This document shows, in pieces, positions 4,271 to 40,374 of a stretch of 64,000 bases of DNA. The DNA lies in the sequence record OP310983.1; one strand, given 5' to 3'. The first letter of the stretch is position 1; each line of letters begins with the position of its first letter. The translations under genes and the position numbers were made by a program. Under the pieces are notes generated by a model that saw only the letters and a list, made by a program, of their open reading frames with translations, ran no database searches and was not told the DNA's origin.

Positions 4271-4927
4271 ATGCTAATGAATGAAATTATCGATATTCTA
4301 GAAGGAGGGAAAGAGAATATTCTCTTAACTAACCATCTAGGTAATGGCAAATATTCCAATGCGGGTAATGCAATGGCTGCATCATATGCCATTGCGGCAC
4401 ATACTGCTGTTGGTCAATTGCGAGATGGTTCAGGAAAACCTTACTGGCATCATTTATTACAAGTAGCTGAGATGGCGCAATTATTCGACCTATCTCACGC
4501 TGCTTATAAAGCAGCATGGTTACATGATGTAATTGAGGATACTGCTGTAACTGCTTCTGATCTAACTAAACTATTCTCAATCCCTGTTGTTAATTTAGTA
4601 ACTGAACTAACAAATGTAACTTACGAAGGTAATCGTAAAACTAGGATTAGTTTACAACATGAAAGACTTTCTCGCATTTCATGGAGTGGTCAATCTCTTA
4701 AGTTACTAGATTCCATTTCAAACATGTGGTCGATTGTTAATGATAAGCCTGATTTTGCTGAACTGTATCTGACTGAGAAAGCTCAACTAATCAGTAAGTT
4801 AAATAATTGTCACCCCGCTATTAAAGATCTGGCTATATCTGTTCTCTATGGCAGGTGTACTATGGTTGGTGGGGATGCACTAAAAGAATATAATAAACTA
4901 TTTTCTGATAATGAAATTGTATGTTAA
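4271..4927 (+). CDS. RelA/SpoT-type HD hydrolase (small alarmone hydrolase/Mesh1-like)
   Basis: AH..GQLRDGSGKPYWHH, AAWLHDVIEDT and LKLLDSISN match the HD_4 (SpoT hydrolase) motifs; no synthetase domain. Confidence 0.85.
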   Translation: MLMNEIIDILEGGKENILLTNHLGNGKYSNAGNAMAASYAIAAHTAVGQLRDGSGKPYWHHLLQVAEMAQLFDLSHAAYKAAWLHDVIEDTAVTASDLTKLFSIPVVNLVTELTNVTYEGNRKTRISLQHERLSRISWSGQSLKLLDSISNMWSIVNDKPDFAELYLTEKAQLISKLNNCHPAIKDLAISVLYGRCTMVGGDALKEYNKLFSDNEIVC

Positions 4928-4945
4928 AATAATTACTTAATATAC

Positions 4946-4964
4946 ACCCTCCCTTCGGGGAGGG
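4946..4964 (+). terminator. intrinsic terminator
   Basis: ACCCTCCC-TTC-GGGAGGGT followed by T tract. Confidence 0.8.
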
Positions 4965-4984
4965 TTTTATTTATCTTTTTTTGT

Positions 4985-5012
4985 ATTTAAACTATTTAAA
5001 AAGCTATATTAC
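4985..5012 (+). promoter_or_regulatory. early promoter
   Basis: ATTTAAACTATTTAAAAAGC-TATATTAC. Confidence 0.8.
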
Positions 5013-5045
5013 AAATATGAATTTAATAACCAAGAGGGCAATACA

Positions 5046-5309
5046 ATGACTGAACGTTTGAAATCCGTATGGTGCGCTTGCAGCTTACTGCGTGAACGCT
5101 GGAGACACATCCAAGACATTGCTGTCGGGGATGAACATCATGTCATAGTAAAAAACGATATGCTGATGGTGTTTCGTGGTCAAGTACCGGTAGGTAGCAT
5201 GTACCGGGGTGACAGTGACCCACTCATCTACGAGGGTGGTGCACTGGAAGAATTTACTAAAGTTGTATTGGATTTAGAATTCAATACTCGTGGTGAAACC
5301 AATAGTTAA
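5046..5309 (+). CDS. hypothetical protein
   Basis: GAGGG RBS; first gene after the early promoter. Confidence 0.75.
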   Translation: MTERLKSVWCACSLLRERWRHIQDIAVGDEHHVIVKNDMLMVFRGQVPVGSMYRGDSDPLIYEGGALEEFTKVVLDLEFNTRGETNS

Positions 5310-5335
5310 TAAAATTAATTTTGAGGTAATTCATT

Positions 5336-5743
5336 ATGAAATATGTAATTGCATTTATGTTGTCTATTGTAACTATCACTGCTAACTCGGCTGTCATGTA
5401 CACTAATCGTGATTCATGCATCGAGTTTGTAAAACAGGCAGATGAATTGTTTGTAAAAGGTGCATCTGTAACTGAAGTGCAAATGAAGACTTATGAAAGG
5501 ATTCATTATATCCTTAATAACACTAAAGATCTAAAGACCAACCAGTCTAAAGTTGAAGAACTCACTGGTCTATTTTACCTATGGTCTAAGGTAGATAAAA
5601 TGGCAATTGAGGCAAGTTTGCCACGTGCAACAAATGCTGCTAAAGTCTATAAGACCACTCCTGAGAAATTCATCATTGATGGTTATTTCCAGCGTTGTGT
5701 AGCGGCAGGTGCGTTTGAAGCAAAACCACTTACTCTAAAATAA
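5336..5743 (+). CDS. secreted two-Cys helical protein (paralog 1)
   Basis: Sec signal MKYVIAFMLSIVTITANSA; RDSC near N-terminus and QRCVAAG near C-terminus. Confidence 0.8.
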   Translation: MKYVIAFMLSIVTITANSAVMYTNRDSCIEFVKQADELFVKGASVTEVQMKTYERIHYILNNTKDLKTNQSKVEELTGLFYLWSKVDKMAIEASLPRATNAAKVYKTTPEKFIIDGYFQRCVAAGAFEAKPLTLK

Positions 5744-5755
5744 TGGAGGTACAAC

Positions 5756-6115
5756 ATGCTTAAGAATTGGCTATTATTCCTTTTCCTGCCAATCCTGTCC
5801 ATTGCATGTCAGCCTGCCCACGCTGTAGAAGTGGGTATTACTAAGAAATCATGTAATGTGGCAGTAAATCTTTCACAAAAAGCAACTGAGCTTTATGATA
5901 AGAACCTATCCCAATTTGAGATAATGATGCAGTTAGACATGATCTCTCGTAAGGATATGGATGACTTGGAGTTCTATGCAGGTGCGGTATATGCCAAGTT
6001 AAACTTAGTTGATATTCGAGTAAATAAACGAAAAGGATTTACCAATGGAGCTATCCTAGATAGGTTAGCTGAAAATTGTGTTGAAGCAATTGGTACTAAA
6101 TTTAACTTGGAGTAG
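5756..6115 (+). CDS. secreted two-Cys helical protein (paralog 2)
   Basis: Signal ending AHA; TKKSC ... ENCVEAIG. Confidence 0.8.
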   Translation: MLKNWLLFLFLPILSIACQPAHAVEVGITKKSCNVAVNLSQKATELYDKNLSQFEIMMQLDMISRKDMDDLEFYAGAVYAKLNLVDIRVNKRKGFTNGAILDRLAENCVEAIGTKFNLE

Positions 6116-6118
6116 ACT

Positions 6119-6913
6119 ATGATTAGTATCTATATTGTCATTATGCTCATGGCTATGCTAGCTGCATTGACATGTGGTAATTTGGTAGATAGTTGGGTAA
6201 GGCCAGCTATTCTAAAATGGTTGAATGATGATGTTGCTATTCATTTCACCAAGGCCACCTGGATGGTTGGGGGAATCCCTAATGATGTTCCAGTGCAACT
6301 AGGTAAAGCTGTTTGGTTACCCAAATACGTGGGTGATGGAATACGTCTTTACATTACGGCTGATGAAATAAAATTTGGATGGAATGGTAAAGAAAAAGAT
6401 GCTTTAGCACGAGCCATTGTTGAAGTTATCTTTATTGGTAAAAATCCAAATAGTAAACTTCTTGAAGTAAGTATTAAACCTATTTGGTTACACCCTTCTA
6501 TCCAAAAAGAAAGTTTCTATTTAATGTTTGATTGGGAAAAGCTTTATACAAAAAATGAAGAGATGCGTATTTGTTGGAAGACAATACGTCACACTTTTTT
6601 CTATGGATTCCTAGGTTTGCTATTTGGCGGTAGTGCCAATGCAGATAACCTTGTATTAACTGAACGTGGATGTGACCAATATGAAGCAATGGTGAGAACT
6701 ATTGCATCTAAAGCTTATATTGGATTAGATCCAGTTATGGGTAGGGAATTCATTATTAATGATCCTGATATGTTAAATGCCCGTGAGAAAGCACAACGTA
6801 ATACCCGTATCATTATCGATATGGTGGAAACTGGACAAGAACCCAAAGACATTGCATTATGGATGAATACTCAATGTAAACAAGAAGCAGTGTCAAATTT
6901 AATCAAACAGTAA
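6119..6913 (+). CDS. membrane-anchored protein joined in frame to secreted paralog 3 (internal start 6563)
   Basis: N-terminal TM helix; internal MRICWK...GGSANA signal peptide followed by TERGC ... TQCKQE. Confidence 0.7.
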   Translation: MISIYIVIMLMAMLAALTCGNLVDSWVRPAILKWLNDDVAIHFTKATWMVGGIPNDVPVQLGKAVWLPKYVGDGIRLYITADEIKFGWNGKEKDALARAIVEVIFIGKNPNSKLLEVSIKPIWLHPSIQKESFYLMFDWEKLYTKNEEMRICWKTIRHTFFYGFLGLLFGGSANADNLVLTERGCDQYEAMVRTIASKAYIGLDPVMGREFIINDPDMLNAREKAQRNTRIIIDMVETGQEPKDIALWMNTQCKQEAVSNLIKQ

Positions 6914-6926
6914 AAAAGGCATAGAT

Positions 6927-7310
6927 ATGAAAAGAAATTTTGAAGATGATCACGTGGTAATGGCAGTGGAAGTATATGAGAAACTGAAAGAAGCTGCTGC
7001 TTATTCATTACACTCTTCTGAAATTAGTAAGATCGAACGACATATGCGTAAGTTTAATCGTGTTCAACGCGATAAACATATTGAAAATATGCATATGGAA
7101 ATGCTTGAGAAACGCGAGGCTATTAGAAAAGCAAAATCTTTCTTTTCTCAAAATGCCGGTAAAATTGGTTGCGTAGTAGATAGGCTTGTCAAAGTATGTG
7201 AAGTGTATAAAATGGATAAGTCTATGGTGGTTGTTGAGTTTCTCCAACATAAATCTAAAATTAAAGTTCCAGTAAATCCTGAAAAAATTACTATTCTTAC
7301 CATTAAATAA
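6927..7310 (+). CDS. hypothetical protein
   Basis: AAGG RBS; charged helical N-terminus, beta-rich C-terminus. Confidence 0.75.
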   Translation: MKRNFEDDHVVMAVEVYEKLKEAAAYSLHSSEISKIERHMRKFNRVQRDKHIENMHMEMLEKREAIRKAKSFFSQNAGKIGCVVDRLVKVCEVYKMDKSMVVVEFLQHKSKIKVPVNPEKITILTIK

Positions 7311-7327
7311 ATGAAGAAGGATTTAAA

Positions 7328-7783
7328 ATGAAAAATGTAATTGCAGCAGCTTTCGCTGGTCTCATTGCCATTACCGGTATCATGTTCAATACCGCAATGG
7401 CTGAAATCAAGATTGGTAAAAAAGATGCTCAACTCACTGTGCAGTCGTGTGCAATGGTTGAAACCATTACTAAACAAGCTGTATTTCGAATGAGTGAAGG
7501 TCATAGCGCAGATGAAGTTGGTGTGCTTATGCTCAACAACTCTGCTAAACTAAAAGATGAGTTGGATACCAATAATTGGATTGCGTTAACATTCGTATTC
7601 AATAGTCTTAATAAAATCAATAATGACCTTAACAGTAAAGAGATCCATGATTATATCCGTAGTCAAGGTTACAATGTGACTACTCCTAATCTGGCAGCTT
7701 TTATCAGCGGGTATTATGGCAATTACTGCATGAAGCATATTGGTGAGAAATTCACTCACATGGTAATTGTTGAACTCATTTAA
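7328..7783 (+). CDS. secreted two-Cys helical protein (paralog 4)
   Basis: Signal ending AMA; TVQSC ... NYCMKHIG. Confidence 0.8.
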   Translation: MKNVIAAAFAGLIAITGIMFNTAMAEIKIGKKDAQLTVQSCAMVETITKQAVFRMSEGHSADEVGVLMLNNSAKLKDELDTNNWIALTFVFNSLNKINNDLNSKEIHDYIRSQGYNVTTPNLAAFISGYYGNYCMKHIGEKFTHMVIVELI

Positions 7784-7815
7784 TTCATATCGAATACTTT
7801 CAAAAGGAAAATAGG

Positions 7816-8193
7816 ATGAAATACGTCTTCTCGCTCATTATCACTATGGTAGCAATGTCGGTTAATGCACAACCCGTAACCGTGTCATCTTGCTACGTGC
7901 TGCACAGCTTGGCAAAGAATATGGTTCAATTCTACACTAATGGCGGTGAGCCATTGGAGATGTATGCAATACTGCAAGATGAACTATCCATTGCCATAGA
8001 TAAAAACCAGAGTGATAAGGCACTCGCTATTAATATCGCATTGGATAATGTCGATGTAATATACCAAAATCTCACTGATCCCGCACTTAAGCTTTTGGCA
8101 AAGAGCGAGGGAAGTGATCTTGGTGAGATGCTGACTGAAAAACTCAGTAATGGGTGTTTCAATATAGTCGGCGAGGAGTTGTATGATAACTAG
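7816..8193 (+). CDS. secreted two-Cys helical protein (paralog 5)
   Basis: Signal ending VNA; TVSSC ... NGCFNIVG. Confidence 0.8.
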   Translation: MKYVFSLIITMVAMSVNAQPVTVSSCYVLHSLAKNMVQFYTNGGEPLEMYAILQDELSIAIDKNQSDKALAINIALDNVDVIYQNLTDPALKLLAKSEGSDLGEMLTEKLSNGCFNIVGEELYDN

Positions 8194-8422
8194 AATCATC
8201 CTAATTGTTGCATGGGTATGGGTAATCTCTCTTATGGGAATGATTACGTATGTTCTTTATGATACGTATCAATTTCGTAAGAAATTAGAAATGCCTGTTG
8301 TAGAATGGGAAGATAAGGCGAAGGACACTCCTGTTAAGAAGTGTCCAGATGAAGTATTATTCGCTGAAGACCCAAAGGATGGCAAACTCAAAATGGGATG
8401 CCCTGAGAGTTATAAGAAATAA
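8183..8422 (+). CDS. small membrane protein with C-terminal Cys pair
   Basis: TM helix IILIVAWVWVISLMGMITYVLY; KKCP...MGCP. Confidence 0.7.
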   Translation: MITRIILIVAWVWVISLMGMITYVLYDTYQFRKKLEMPVVEWEDKAKDTPVKKCPDEVLFAEDPKDGKLKMGCPESYKK

Positions 8423-8424
8423 TT

Positions 8425-8444
8425 AGAGGACCTTCGGGTCCTCT
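8425..8444 (+). terminator. intrinsic terminator
   Basis: AGAGGACC-TTCG-GGTCCTCT followed by TTTT. Confidence 0.8.
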
Positions 8445-8504
8445 TTTTAACCGACTGGACGGTTAAAACTAGGTGGGATAAATTAAACTATTTGAGGAAA
8501 TCTA

Positions 8505-8612
8505 ATGCAACTTAGTAATGAACTTTTCTATGTGGGTATGGTAGCTGTATCAATGTCAATCGGTATGCTATTTAGCTATATTTATCACACTCATAAGAAA
8601 AAATATAAATAA
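8505..8612 (+). CDS. single-TM microprotein (35 aa, not in track)
   Basis: GAGGA RBS; [35 protein letters not shown]; terminator 8622-8641 follows. Confidence 0.65.
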
Positions 8613-8621
8613 AGTCATAAA

Positions 8622-8641
8622 CCCTCTCCCAAAGGAGAGGG
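8622..8641 (+). terminator. intrinsic terminator
   Basis: CCCTCTCC-CAAA-GGAGAGGG. Confidence 0.75.
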
Positions 8642-8668
8642 CTTTTACATTAAATTTTTTTTGAAATC

Positions 8669-8676
8669 TATATTAC
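8669..8676 (+). promoter_or_regulatory. early promoter core
   Basis: TATATTAC 40 nt upstream of ATG 8716. Confidence 0.7.
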
Positions 8677-8715
8677 ACTAATACAACATTAAACTATTAA
8701 ATAGGTAATTAAAAA

Positions 8716-10845: not shown

Positions 10846-11280
10846 ATGACTGAGGTAGTGATTGCACTTATCCTGTCAGCAATTATTGTTTACTTAATTA
10901 ATATTTTTAAACAATCGAAAGTAATTTATACTAATGCCATAAATGATAATGTCTTTGTTGTTACTGGTTGTACTTACATATCAGAAAATAATGAGGACGG
11001 TACATTAACAACTTTTTCACCTAAATTAAATAATAGGTTAATAATTGATTTAACTAAAGGTCAACCCAATAAAGACTTTTATATTTCAGTATTAGATAAC
11101 ACACTTAAATTCCATCACACTGTTGATGAAATCATCACAGCTAATAAATGGGAAGCTTTATTTAAAATTAGCATAACTAAAGAGGATGTGTGTATCTCAG
11201 GAATACCTCTTAAAAATAAAAGCATGAAATGTAATTTACACTGGGTTATAGCACCAAGTAAAATGGTGAATAAGTTGTAA
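10846..11280 (+). CDS. N-terminally anchored membrane protein
   Basis: TM helix VVIALILSAIIVYLINIF. Confidence 0.7.
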   Translation: MTEVVIALILSAIIVYLINIFKQSKVIYTNAINDNVFVVTGCTYISENNEDGTLTTFSPKLNNRLIIDLTKGQPNKDFYISVLDNTLKFHHTVDEIITANKWEALFKISITKEDVCISGIPLKNKSMKCNLHWVIAPSKMVNKL

Positions 11281-13898: not shown

Positions 13899-14195
13899 AT
13901 GAATAAATATTACCATTTGAAGAAACAGAAGGATGCTACATGGACAATTGAATTTCTAGGAAAGATGCGTAATTTTAAATTCAACCATGTAACTAAACAG
14001 AATAATAGCTGGGTTAGCATGGGTATTGAAGGTTATCCAGCACTTAAATTTAACTGTGATGGATTTGGTAGATTAGAAAGTATTCAACCCATTGATGATG
14101 ATTTAACCATCGATGAAATATTTATTCCACGTAAACATTCTGTTTCACAGTGTATCGATATAACAACACTTTACATAGGTGGTCAATGTGACTGA
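13899..14195 (+). CDS. hypothetical protein
   Basis: GGTGA RBS. Confidence 0.7.
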   Translation: MNKYYHLKKQKDATWTIEFLGKMRNFKFNHVTKQNNSWVSMGIEGYPALKFNCDGFGRLESIQPIDDDLTIDEIFIPRKHSVSQCIDITTLYIGGQCD

Positions 14196-14625
14196 GATAA
14201 TATTAGTTATTTTATCATTGTTTGTTCTTTCAGTCATAACCGGCTATTGTATAACCCGGTTAGAGAAAACCGAAGATATAGCCTATTATGTTAAATCAAT
14301 TACGTATTACTTAGGTGAATCCGGTGATACATTTTTTAATAGTGAACCCAAAGTAATACAGCTGGATAACCCTGTAAAACTAGTTTTCACTAATGAACCA
14401 GTTCAAATAAAAACACTTTATTTAGACCTAGATAAGAAAGAATTATATCTTAATCATCCCGAACATGCTTGTATTGTAATGCGTGTTATTTTCTTTTTAA
14501 ATTATCATAACCAGAAAAAACTCATCGGTTATTCAGATGAGTACTATCATGACAATGAGTATGTTGATAGTGAGTTTGATATGGTCATAAAGAAAATTAG
14601 TGTAGAATGCTATAAAGGTTTATAA
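14179..14625 (+). CDS. N-terminally anchored membrane protein
   Basis: TM helix IILVILSLFVLSVITGYCI; real start may be GTG 14188. Confidence 0.7.
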   Translation: MVNVTEIILVILSLFVLSVITGYCITRLEKTEDIAYYVKSITYYLGESGDTFFNSEPKVIQLDNPVKLVFTNEPVQIKTLYLDLDKKELYLNHPEHACIVMRVIFFLNYHNQKKLIGYSDEYYHDNEYVDSEFDMVIKKISVECYKGL

Positions 14626-39960: not shown

Positions 39961-40374
39961 CTACATTATATCCCGTGTACCATCATTCATTTCAACAACA
40001 GTGACTTTATCACCAACCTTTGGTTTTTCATTGGTAACTGTTTGAACCATGTACTGCTTGCCATCTGTATTAACAATCAGTTTACATTGGAATGTTTCAG
40101 TAGCACTAACATTATTACCGACTGCACCGCCAGCGGCACCACCGATTAAACCACCTACCCAACCTCCAGATTTACCAAAGATTGCTCGACCTAATACAGC
40201 GCCTGCGGTGGCTCCAACTGCACCTCCAACAGTAGTACCGACAACACTACTATCTTTAGCAACTAGCTGACATTCTGAATGTGCAATAATACCATCTGTA
40301 GTTGATTTTACTTCAGTTGCTGCAAATAGAACAGTAGACCATATTAAAACTACGAATGCGATAATCTTAATCAT
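39961..40374 (-). CDS. exported glycine-zipper 2TM protein (YcfJ/SlyB-like)
   Basis: Signal peptide; GTTVGGAVGATAGAVLG...GGLIGGAAGGAVGN; C-terminal beta domain PKVGDKVTV. Confidence 0.8.
   Translation of the reverse strand: MIKIIAFVVLIWSTVLFAATEVKSTTDGIIAHSECQLVAKDSSVVGTTVGGAVGATAGAVLGRAIFGKSGGWVGGLIGGAAGGAVGNNVSATETFQCKLIVNTDGKQYMVQTVTNEKPKVGDKVTVVEMNDGTRDIM

What the first reader, a model, noticed from the sequence alone, without database searches (positions are those of the whole stretch)
5336..8193. Early operon with five highly diverged, secreted, disulfide-stapled paralogs
Seen: ORFs 5336, 5756, 6563 (internal to 6119), 7328 and 7816 each have a Sec signal peptide and exactly two Cys in the mature chain. 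One Cys lies near the N-terminus (T..SC or T..GC), followed about 15-18 residues later by a Y/F..G/N.S..E turn. The other lies near the C-terminus (C...IG/AG). Identity elsewhere is very low. The unit runs from the early promoter at 5005 to the terminators at 8425/8622 and also holds three TM proteins (6119, 8183, 8505), so 8 of about 10 products target the envelope. Inferred: a diversified family of periplasmic helical bundles made right after infection. Possible roles are superinfection exclusion (blocking pilus/flagellum receptors or entry machinery), inhibition of envelope-stress or periplasmic defence sensors, or HdeA-like chaperoning. I know of no description of this family.
Basis: partly seen in the sequence, partly recalled or inferred. 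Interest (0 to 1): 0.8.

Follow-up and report, generated by a model that had tools for sequence, protein, structure and literature searches.

The report
Exported two-cysteine paralogs in phiKZ
An early operon of the giant Pseudomonas phage phiKZ (genes 246.1 to 253.1) encodes an undescribed family of small helical proteins that are sent to the cell envelope and carry one conserved cysteine pair; their job is unknown, most plausibly guarding the infected cell's envelope against further invaders.

Summary
The window is a phiKZ-type Pseudomonas jumbo phage. The finding covers phiKZ genes 247 to 252, all annotated as hypothetical.

**Observation.** It holds. Four ORFs and the C-terminal domain of gp249 each follow a signal-like hydrophobic segment and keep exactly two cysteines.

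**Corrections:**
- gp248 carries a third, conserved cysteine in a lipobox-like position, so it is probably a lipoprotein.
- "ORF 6563" is the periplasmic domain of a conserved two-TM protein (gp249), not a separate gene.

**Operon.** gp248 protein has been detected 15 min after infection. Published TnSeq shows insertions in every gene of the unit.

**Paralogy.**
- gp248, gp251 and gp252 are linked by profile HMMs.
- gp247 and the gp249 C-domain are linked only by profile-profile comparison (empirical p about 0.01 or lower, both cysteines in register).

**Structure and distribution.** A confident gp251 model (pLDDT 87) is a five-helix bundle with no solved-structure match and no Pfam or NCBIfam family. 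A profile scan of 1.84 billion proteins finds only 14 relatives. The named relatives are from Pseudomonas chimalliviruses; the others are unnamed metagenome proteins, several on jumbo-sized contigs.

**Function.** Untested. My best guess (about 0.4) is envelope-level superinfection exclusion.

The parts
4946..4965 (+). Intrinsic terminator closing the upstream unit (gp244-246)
   Evidence: GC-rich stem-loop followed by a T-run. The published transcript end T110, phiKZ 240325, equals window 4972.
5005..5012 (+). phiKZ early (virion RNA polymerase) promoter motif TATATTAC; mapped TSS at window 5020
   Evidence: The motif was found and is listed as the phiKZ promoter consensus in PMC7058600. ONT-cappable-seq promoter P122, labelled 'early promoter', has its TSS at phiKZ 240373, which is window 5020.
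5046..5309 (+). gp246.1, 87 aa, no hydrophobic segment; first gene of the unit, probably cytoplasmic
   Evidence: It has no counterpart in the 70-85% identical relative L004.
5336..5743 (+). gp247: signal peptide plus a 117-aa mature chain with C28/C121; probable distant family member
   Evidence: A homolog sits in the PA1C cluster (E 1e-5). hhalign against the family aligns end to end with both cysteines in register; 1 of 200 shuffles reaches the score. The five-helix model has pLDDT 74.7.
5756..6115 (+). gp248: short-form family member and probable lipoprotein (C18 in a lipobox-like position; C33/C108 pair)
   Evidence: Orthologs occur in phiPA3, PA1C, Phabio, Psa21 and D6. The cysteine at the end of the signal peptide is conserved. 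Protein of the Churi ortholog was detected 15 min after infection.
6119..6913 (+). gp249: TM1 (residues 1-20), a ~130-aa domain predicted cytoplasmic, a signal-like TM2 (residues ~149-175), and a periplasmic 89-aa domain (6644-6910) with C185/C253
   Evidence: Orthologs in L004 and L011 keep the fused architecture (E 9e-37). The C-domain scores 21 against the family in hhalign, and 0 of 200 shuffles reach that. Topology is inferred from charge distribution.
6927..7310 (+). gp250: 127 aa, no hydrophobic segment, cysteines not conserved; cytoplasmic, role unknown
   Evidence: It has the highest dN/dS of the unit, 0.23.
7328..7783 (+). gp251: long-form family member, signal peptide plus a 126-aa mature chain, C41/C134
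   Evidence: The gp248-only HMM hits it (E 5e-4; its L004 ortholog 1e-5). It also hits gp248's PHROG. The AlphaFold2 model has pLDDT 87.3 and pTM 0.81.
7816..8193 (+). gp252: long-form family member, signal peptide plus a 107-aa mature chain, C26/C114
   Evidence: The gp248-only HMM hits it (E 1.7e-3; its L004 ortholog 5.5e-4). Alignment.
8183..8422 (+). gp253: 79-aa single-TM protein with a conserved cysteine pair in its tail; overlaps the end of gp252 by 11 nt
   Evidence: An ortholog sits in the same position in L011 (E 7e-12). Orientation in the membrane is undetermined.
8425..8444 (+). First terminator of the unit (published transcript end at window 8448)
   Evidence: Stem-loop followed by TTTTT on the + strand. 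Published T111, phiKZ 243801.
8505..8612 (+). gp253.1: 35-aa hydrophobic peptide, included in the read-through transcript
   Evidence: TU180 includes PHIKZ_p74.
8622..8641 (+). Second terminator (published transcript end at window 8646)
   Evidence: Published T112, phiKZ 243999.

Best explanation
**What it is (confidence about 0.85).** This is one early transcription unit of phiKZ, gp246.1 to gp253.1, read by the virion RNA polymerase.

- Its main cargo is a phage-specific family of small five-helix proteins that the host Sec system exports.
- Each family member carries one conserved cysteine pair that probably forms a disulfide tying the first helix to the last.
- gp248 (probably lipid-anchored), gp251 and gp252 are firm members.
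- gp247 and the periplasmic C-domain of the two-TM protein gp249 are probable distant members.
- Small inner-membrane proteins gp253 and gp253.1 travel with them.

**How it most likely works (inferred, confidence about 0.4).**
1. Within minutes of infection the proteins populate the periplasm, the inner membrane and possibly the outer membrane.
2. There they bind envelope components or the entry machinery of incoming phages. They could do this by masking receptors or by neutralising tail-borne cell-wall enzymes or ejection proteins.
3. The already infected cell is then closed to further phages and its envelope stays intact through the long latent period. This is the logic of T4 Imm plus Spackle and of T5 Llp.
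4. Each diverged paralog would cover a different target.
For: **Early expression.**
- Mapped early promoter and two transcript ends, giving an 8- or 9-gene unit; promoter motif and terminators are present in the sequence.
- gp248 ortholog protein is present 15 min after infection.

**Export.**
- Signal-like N-termini.
- A conserved lipobox-like cysteine in gp248 orthologs.
- The cysteine pairs of all exported products are conserved in a 70-85% identical relative, whereas cysteines of the cytoplasmic gp250 and gp246 are not.
- All 22 aligned members have exactly two mature cysteines.

**Family.**
- HMM links among gp248, gp251 and gp252.
- hhalign links for gp247 and the gp249 C-domain, with shuffle and neighbour controls.
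- Matching five-helix order in the two models.

**Accessory status and arms-race signature.**
- Every gene tolerates transposon insertions, and the region is described as non-essential and likely host-interacting.
- Relatives are confined to jumbo-phage contigs: 14 hits among 1.84 billion proteins.
- Long forms are unrecognisable by BLAST between genera, yet dN/dS is below 0.2 between close relatives.

**Conserved module with membrane partners.** Seen across lineages.

**From established knowledge, not tested here.** Early small exported or lipoprotein products of lytic phages are typically exclusion factors (T4 Imm and Sp, T5 Llp, Cor).
Against: - No functional datum bears on exclusion, and no partner is known.
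- No sequence or fold similarity to any known exclusion protein.
- No superinfection exclusion by phiKZ is described in the papers I opened from that search.
- Localisation is predicted, not measured.
- The lipobox of gp248 is non-canonical at position -3, and some orthologs lack the cysteine or have Met at -1.
- The cytoplasmic domain of gp249 and the cytoplasmic gp246.1 and gp250 are not explained by simple masking.
Confidence: 0.4

Rival explanations
1. **Lysis-timing or envelope-maintenance module.** The periplasmic proteins would act like the T4 RI antiholin, or like inhibitors of host cell-wall hydrolases. They would bind the periplasmic domain of the phiKZ holin or host autolysins and hold the envelope intact until assembly is complete. 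gp249 would relay a periplasmic signal to its cytoplasmic domain.
For: - gp249 joins a family domain in the periplasm to a ~130-aa domain predicted to be cytoplasmic.
- The phiKZ lysis paper reports a class III holin and slower lysis at high multiplicity, suggesting a lysis-inhibition system whose periplasmic component is unknown.
- A late promoter is mapped inside the start of gp252.
Against: - The operon lies about 100 genes away from the lysis cassette, which is around gp143.
- It is transcribed from an early promoter.
- The PDB fold and sequence searches returned no significant match of any kind, so no holin or antiholin structure either.
- The genes are dispensable in standard culture, although T4 rI is too (from my own knowledge).
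Confidence: 0.15
2. **Counter-measure against envelope-acting threats other than phages.** The proteins would serve as periplasmic immunity-like or decoy proteins. Their targets would be host defence sensors in the envelope, envelope-stress signalling, or weapons of neighbouring bacteria such as type VI cell-wall effectors or pyocins. The paralogs would form an array of specificities.
For: - The genes lie in the large non-essential arm that the TnSeq authors consider host-interacting or defence-related, a few genes from the Juk activator gp241.
- There are tandem, diverged, exported paralogs, one of them probably lipid-anchored. This resembles arrays of periplasmic immunity genes (resemblance from my own knowledge).
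- Overexpressing the gp248 ortholog was not singled out as toxic in the Churi screen.
Against: - No similarity to any known immunity or anti-defence family; the PADLOC library was not searched.
- No envelope-located defence against phiKZ is linked to these genes in the papers read.
Confidence: 0.15
3. **Not one family.** The ORFs would be unrelated small exported ORFans that share signal peptides and a cysteine pair by convergence. gp247 and the gp249 C-domain in particular would be unrelated to gp248, gp251 and gp252.
For: - Pairwise comparisons are not significant.
- The family HMM gives gp247 only E = 0.028, and its L004 ortholog E = 4.
- gp249 lies in the noise for HMMs.
- The gp247 model matches the gp251 entry with only TM 0.30.
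Against: - gp248, gp251 and gp252 are joined by a training-independent HMM (E 1e-5 to 2e-3 among 493 ORFs) and by a PHROG cross-hit.
- With a 22-sequence profile, gp247 and gp249C align end to end with both cysteines in register. They beat 199 of 200 and 200 of 200 column shuffles, and they beat all seven neighbour controls.
- The gp247 homolog in PA1C sits in the same tandem cluster.
- The helix order is the same in both models.
Confidence: 0.07

Closest known systems
T4 Imm (inner membrane) plus Spackle (periplasmic) superinfection-exclusion pair
   Same: - Lytic-phage products made before lysis and sent to the inner membrane and periplasm.
- Small and non-essential in the laboratory.
- A mix of membrane and soluble periplasmic components in one phage.

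The T4 facts are from my own knowledge.
   Different: - No sequence or fold similarity was found.
- Here there is a multi-paralog family with a conserved cysteine pair, and one member is probably lipid-anchored.
- No exclusion phenotype is known for phiKZ.
T5 Llp and phi80/N15 Cor outer-membrane lipoproteins that mask the phage receptor
   Same: - A small, early, exported phage protein with a lipobox-type cysteine (gp248 and most of its orthologs).
- Llp is also disulfide-bonded (from my own knowledge).
   Different: - Only one of the five proteins is a candidate lipoprotein, and its lipobox is non-canonical.
- The fold here is all-helical.
- No comparator structure was fetched, so no direct fold comparison was made.
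Saposin-like proteins (small helical bundles with disulfides joining the first and last helices)
   Same: - Four to five helices in about 80-120 residues, with the first helix tied to the last through cysteines.
- Weak profile hits start exactly at the first cysteine (E 0.6-0.8).
- Saposin A appears in the fold search (TM 0.51 on the target).
   Different: - One cysteine pair instead of three.
- The matches are not significant (Foldseek probability 0.23).
- The gp251 model adds paired N- and C-terminal strands.
MliC/PliC-type periplasmic lysozyme inhibitors (one lipid-anchored, one soluble paralog)
   Same: The pattern of a lipid-anchored paralog and soluble periplasmic paralogs of one small disulfide-containing family (the known pattern is from my own knowledge).
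   Different: - Those are beta-rich bacterial proteins, whereas this family is helical and phage-restricted.
- No similarity was detected.
PHROG families 15284, 22400, 26535, 27482 and 22383 (unknown function)
   Same: The five proteins are the seed-like members of these PHROGs (E 1e-56 to 1e-190).
   Different: PHROGs keeps them as five unrelated unknown-function families. Only gp251 weakly touches gp248's PHROG (E 0.0026). The relationship shown here is not recorded there.

Membership tests
phiKZ early (virion RNA polymerase) transcription unit | AT-rich promoter with the TATATTAC element, and an experimentally mapped early TSS | tested here: met
   The motif lies at 5005-5012. Published early promoter P122 has its TSS at window 5020, and TU179 and TU180 end at window 8448 and 8646.
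Sec / signal peptidase I substrates | Tripartite N-terminal signal: charged start, hydrophobic core of 10-15 residues, small residues at -3 and -1 | tested here: met
   Read directly from the translations of gp247, gp251 and gp252, and from the segment before the gp249 C-domain. No dedicated predictor was available, and cleavage was not observed.
Bacterial lipoproteins (signal peptidase II substrates) | Lipobox ending in an invariant cysteine at +1, with a small residue at -1 | tested here: inconclusive
   gp248 and its orthologs in L004, phiPA3, Phabio, PA1C and L009, plus P0016, P0019 and P0021, have Ala or Gly at -1 followed by Cys and then usually Gln-Pro. Position -3 is never Leu. The Psa21 and L012 orthologs have Met at -1, and P0017 and P0018 lack the cysteine. 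A signal peptidase I site a few residues further on is an alternative.
The gp248/gp251/gp252 family defined here | Profile-HMM similarity of the mature chain, independent of the signal peptide | tested here: met
   An HMM built from gp248 orthologs alone hits gp251 (E 1e-5 and 5e-4) and gp252 (5.5e-4 and 1.7e-3) among 493 ORFs, where noise starts at about E = 1. gp251 also hits gp248's PHROG.
The gp248/gp251/gp252 family defined here | Two invariant cysteines, at the start of helix 1 and the end of the last helix, and no other cysteine in the mature chain | tested here: met
   This holds in all 22 aligned members. Positions relative to the helices come from the gp251 model. gp247 and gp249C have the same arrangement.
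The gp248/gp251/gp252 family defined here | Membership of gp247 and of the gp249 C-domain | tested here: inconclusive
   - **HMMs:** gp247 E = 0.028; gp249 in the noise.
- **hhalign against the 22-sequence profile:** scores 17.8 and 21.0 over 77-78 columns with both cysteines in register. These are reached by 1 of 200 and 0 of 200 column shuffles. Seven unrelated neighbours score 7-11.5.
- **Fold search of the gp247 model:** the gp251 entry ranks 3rd but is not significant (TM 0.30).
T4 Spackle-like periplasmic exclusion proteins | Sequence or fold homology to Spackle | tested here: not met
   No Pfam, NCBIfam or PHROG function hit. The PDB profile search and the Foldseek search of the gp251 model returned no such entry; the best Foldseek E-value was 0.5. 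Whether the proteins work like Spackle was not testable.
Saposin-like proteins | Three conserved disulfides in a four-to-five-helix bundle; significant fold match | tested here: not met
   There is one cysteine pair only. Profile E-values are 0.6-0.8. Foldseek probability is 0.23 with query TM 0.36.
HdeA/HdeB periplasmic chaperones | Sequence or fold homology to HdeA | tested here: not met
   No Pfam hit for any of the 22 members. HdeA is not among the PDB matches.
Disulfide-bonded periplasmic proteins | The two cysteines are adjacent and oxidised | not testable with these tools
Adjacency is inferred from the gp251 model: C16 lies 6 residues after the N-terminal strand and C109 lies 7 residues before the C-terminal strand that pairs with it.

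The most novel reading that the evidence does not exclude
The family is a new fold that Pseudomonas nucleus-forming phages use as a diversifying periplasmic recognition module.

- Soluble, lipid-anchored and membrane-tethered copies would each recognise a different envelope or invader component.
- The gp249 copy would couple periplasmic recognition, for example of a second phage's attack, to a cytoplasmic output domain.
- This would give jumbo phages a trans-envelope sensing and exclusion system of their own, unrelated to those of T-even and T5-like phages.
Probability: 0.15. Interest if true: 0.8.

Novelty: new variant of a known kind. Interest (0 to 1): 0.58.

Why it matters
**A gap in jumbo-phage biology.** Research on nucleus-forming jumbo phages has centred on the cytoplasm: the vesicle, the nucleus, protein import and the ribosomes. 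Two recent reviews of jumbo phages that I searched do not contain the words periplasm or signal peptide.

**What this unit shows.** phiKZ spends one of its early transcription units almost entirely on the envelope. Seven of its nine products are exported or membrane-bound. Five of those seven carry one new family domain that has no solved-structure relative.

**If the family turns out to act on phage entry or envelope integrity:**
- it would add a missing envelope chapter to jumbo-phage biology;
- it would help explain competition between phages that share a host;
- it would be relevant to the behaviour of phiKZ-type phages when they are combined with other phages.

**Value regardless of function.** The family definition, the member list and the confident gp251 model give annotators a name for about 30 hypothetical proteins.

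Tried and rejected
- **Pairwise phmmer and BLASTP among the five proteins.** Nothing was significant. The best was gp251-gp252 at 10 bits, so paralogy could not rest on pairwise data.
- **tblastn of gp251, gp252 and Psa21 gp333 against 50,697 phage records.** Only near-identical copies were found. The long forms are too diverged for BLAST.
- **Word-indexed protein searches.** With gp251, the family alignment and phiPA3 gp303 these returned very few relatives. The index misses members without shared 5-mers. The full HMMER scan was more useful.
- **Two-sequence profiles of gp247 and gp249C against a 12-sequence family profile.** Only short or out-of-register matches appeared. These were superseded by three-sequence against 22-sequence profiles.
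- **Single-sequence AlphaFold2 of gp247.** It gave useful secondary structure, but the tertiary model is unreliable: the other four models have pLDDT 52-61, and it matches its own BFVD entry with only TM 0.57. The failed superposition on gp251 is therefore uninformative.
- **Pfam, NCBIfam, PHROGs function labels, and PDB by sequence and by fold.** No informative hit.
- **Lysis cassette link.** The phiKZ lysis paper does not mention these genes.
- **Literature on these gene numbers.** This gave only the Churi proteomics table. gp247 in the nuclear-shell interaction paper refers to phiPA3 numbering.
- **dRNA-seq paper supplements.** Not held.
- **Considered and rejected:** the ORF at 39961-40374 as a sixth member. 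It is a glycine-zipper protein, HMM E = 59.


Full report
**Where the window comes from.** The region 4900-8700 is 100% identical to a phiKZ-type Pseudomonas aeruginosa jumbo phage and at least 99% identical to 46 other records of the same species. Against the phiKZ reference the ORFs of the finding map as follows:

| Window coordinates | phiKZ gene |
|---|---|
| 5336-5743 | gp247 |
| 5756-6115 | gp248 |
| 6119-6913 | gp249 |
| 7328-7783 | gp251 |
| 7816-8193 | gp252 |
| 5046-5309 | gp246.1 |
| 6927-7310 | gp250 |
| 8183-8422 | gp253 |
| 8505-8612 | gp253.1 |

All are annotated as hypothetical in every record inspected.

**The observation.** The ORFs exist as described.
- gp247, gp251 and gp252 each have exactly two cysteines, both downstream of a hydrophobic N-terminus.
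- Those N-termini have a lysine at position 2, a hydrophobic core and small residues at -3/-1. This is read from the sequence; hydropathy is. No signal-peptide predictor was available.
- gp248 has a third cysteine (C18) at the end of its hydrophobic core. That cysteine is preceded by Ala or Gly and followed by Gln-Pro in the orthologs of L004, phiPA3, Phabio, PA1C and L009 and in several metagenomic proteins.
  - It is not canonical, because there is never a Leu at -3.
  - Some orthologs lack it.
  - "Probable lipoprotein" is as far as the data go.
The ATG has no convincing ribosome-binding site, unlike the other genes. The whole 250-264 aa architecture is conserved in two relatives.
- In gp249, positive charges precede the second hydrophobic segment and acidic residues follow it. 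I therefore infer that gp249 has both termini outside, a cytoplasmic middle domain of about 130 residues, and a periplasmic C-domain of 89 residues with C185/C253.
- The clustering is not chance. Six of the eight operon ORFs of at least 50 aa have an N-terminal hydrophobic segment, against 22 of 112 in the window (P = 7e-4).

**The operon.**
- A stem-loop terminator at 4946-4965 closes the previous unit.
- The phiKZ early-promoter element lies at 5005-5012.
- Stem-loops with T-runs lie at 8425-8444 and 8622-8641, and the next copy of the promoter element is at 8669.
- The supplement of the ONT-cappable-seq study of phiKZ lists early promoter P122 with its TSS at 240373, which is window 5020.
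- The same supplement lists two transcription units ending at 243801 and 243999, which are window 8448 and 8646. They contain exactly gp246.1-gp253 and gp246.1-gp253.1.
- Protein of the 99% identical gp248 ortholog of phage Churi was one of 19 proteins found 15 min after infection in two proteomic experiments. It was not singled out in the growth-inhibition screen.
- The phiKZ TnSeq tables show 4-33 insertions in every gene from PHIKZ246.1 to PHIKZ253.1. The authors describe orf184-304 as a largely non-essential, probably host-interacting arm.

**Are they paralogs?** Pairwise comparison says nothing, so I turned to profiles.
- gp248 has BLAST-detectable orthologs in phiPA3, PA1C, PS119XW, Phabio, Psa21 and D6 at 25-39% identity.
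- An HMM built only from the mature parts of six gp248 orthologs, searched against all 493 ORFs of the window and five loci, gave these hits:
  - gp251: E 5e-4, and 1e-5 for its ortholog in L004.
  - gp252: E 1.7e-3 and 5.5e-4.
  - A 150-aa Psa21 protein: E 4e-3.
  - Noise began near E = 1.
- PHROGs independently shows gp251 touching gp248's family.
- A profile of five members, read against 1.84 billion representative proteins, found only 14 proteins at E of 1e-3 or lower. All the new ones have a signal peptide and the same two cysteines.
- In the resulting 22-member alignment the two cysteines are invariant, a glycine five residues after the second is nearly so, and every mature chain has exactly two cysteines.
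- The family has two forms. The short form is about 95 residues (gp248 type). The long form is 107-132 residues (gp251 and gp252 type) and has an insertion before the last helix.

gp247 and the gp249 C-domain are harder to place.
- HMMs give gp247 E = 0.028 and leave gp249 in the noise.
- gp247 has a homolog in PA1C (E 1e-5). It sits directly after PA1C's gp248-like and gp251-like genes.
- With three-sequence profiles against the 22-sequence family profile, hhalign aligns both end to end with both cysteines in register (P = 0.005 and 0.0025).
- In my own control, 1 of 200 (gp247) and 0 of 200 (gp249C) column shuffles reach the observed scores. Seven unrelated neighbouring proteins score 7-11.5, against 17.8 and 21.0.
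- I conclude that three members are firm and two are probable.

**Structure.**
- AlphaFold2 on mature gp251 with nine family sequences gives a confident model (pLDDT 87.3, pTM 0.81). It has an N-terminal strand, five helices and a C-terminal strand.
- C16 opens helix 1 and C109 closes helix 5. The two terminal strands are drawn as a pair, so the cysteines must lie close together.
- Against predicted viral structures, the matches with probability 0.97-1.0 that carry a name are all uncharacterised proteins of Pseudomonas chimalliviruses: Phabio, 201phi2-1, Psa21, phiPA3 and PS119XW.
- Against the PDB nothing is significant. The best E-value is 0.5, and saposin A reaches TM 0.51 on the target with probability 0.23. 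A sequence profile gives only weak saposin hits at E 0.6-0.8.
- A single-sequence model of gp247 (pLDDT 74.7) has five helices in the same order and proportions, with the cysteines again at the start of the first and the end of the last helix.
- The tertiary arrangement of that gp247 model is unreliable. Its match to the gp251 entry ranks third but is not significant.

**Distribution and selection.**
- gp251 and gp252 are found only in the phiKZ species and in one 79-85% identical relative on a metagenomic contig, L004.
- In that relative the cysteines of every exported product are conserved, while those of cytoplasmic gp250 and gp246 are not.
- Synonymous sites are saturated and dN/dS is 0.07-0.23, so these are real genes under purifying selection.
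- Other lineages carry smaller or different sets. PA1C has three members. Psa21, L009 and L012 have two. phiPA3 and Phabio have one near the HD-phosphohydrolase gene.
- The 47-kb contig L011 keeps the order HD gene, gp248-like, gp249 ortholog, gp251-like, gp253 ortholog. The exported proteins and their membrane companions therefore form a conserved module.

**How it most likely works.**

Shown:
- early transcription;
- early presence of one protein;
- dispensability in culture;
- a conserved cysteine pair;
- a phage-restricted helical family.

Inferred:
- Sec export;
- a disulfide bond;
- lipid anchoring of gp248;
- the topology of gp249.

From these I commit to an envelope-level exclusion or shielding role, with confidence of about 0.4. 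The reasons are:
1. Early, small, exported or lipid-anchored, non-essential products of lytic phages are classically exclusion factors (T4 Imm and Spackle, T5 Llp, Cor; from my own knowledge).
2. Fast divergence between genera combined with purifying selection within a lineage fits proteins that track variable external targets.
3. Several paralogs placed at different depths of the envelope fit several targets.

The rivals are a lysis-timing or wall-maintenance role, a counter-measure against envelope-acting defences or neighbours' weapons, and non-homology of the two weak members. No tool here could discriminate between the functional readings.

**Comparison with what is known, and novelty.**
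- No Pfam or NCBIfam model matches any of the 22 members.
- PHROGs files the five proteins in five separate families of unknown function.
- No paper in the library mentions these genes beyond a proteomics table and data tables.
- Two recent reviews of jumbo phages do not mention periplasm or signal peptides.
- The family is therefore undescribed, and its fold has no solved relative.
- The kind of thing, early exported accessory proteins of a lytic phage, is familiar. I therefore rate it a new variant of a known kind rather than categorically new.

**Limits.**
- Signal peptides and the lipobox were judged by inspection.
- Cysteine adjacency was not measured.
- Only two structure predictions were possible, so gp248, gp252 and gp249 were not modelled.
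- The copy-number survey covers the neighbourhoods fetched, not whole genomes.

Noticed in passing
window 39961-40374 (- strand): A 137-aa ORF with a cleavable-looking signal peptide, a long glycine-zipper stretch and two cysteines. It is another exported phiKZ protein but is not a member of this family (HMM E = 59).
   Followed up: partly
window ~7849 (inside the start of gp252): The ONT-cappable-seq supplement lists a 'late promoter' P123 with its TSS at phiKZ 243202, 33 nt inside gp252's signal-peptide codons. A late transcript from there could serve gp253, or a gp252 form without a signal peptide.
   Followed up: no
window 7816-8422 versus L004 4495-5101: Synonymous divergence from the L004 relative drops from above 1.1 in gp246-gp251 to 0.58 in gp252 and 0.29 in gp253. 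This suggests a recent recombination exchange covering the end of the operon.
   Followed up: no
window 5046-5309; L004 1861-1994: gp246.1, the first gene of the unit, has no counterpart in the otherwise collinear relative L004.
   Followed up: partly
L005 (phiPA3) 5505-5669; L008 6348-6518; L006 5351-5506: An unannotated ORF in phiPA3, just after gp303, is homologous to a ~55-aa single-TM protein with a C-x6-C tail. That protein follows the family genes in PA1C and Phabio.
   Followed up: partly
L007 5334-5792; L012 5549-6004; L010 3980-4426; L013 3-377: Psa21-type clusters carry a conserved ~150-aa protein without a hydrophobic segment between the short and long family members (E 1e-18 to 2e-62). 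It is not homologous to phiKZ gp250, which occupies a similar position.
   Followed up: partly
window 10846-11280 and 14179-14625 (+ strand): Two further ~145-aa ORFs with an N-terminal TM anchor and three cysteines each. They are not family members.
   Followed up: no
window 8669-8676: A second copy of the early-promoter element lies directly after the second terminator and ahead of gp254. The window has 11 + strand copies against 1 on the - strand.
   Followed up: no
PP456878.1 (phage KEN19) 58910-59285: gp252 matches this one isolate at only 89% identity and in two pieces, while 45 other records are at least 99% identical. This may be a local disruption or a variant.
   Followed up: no
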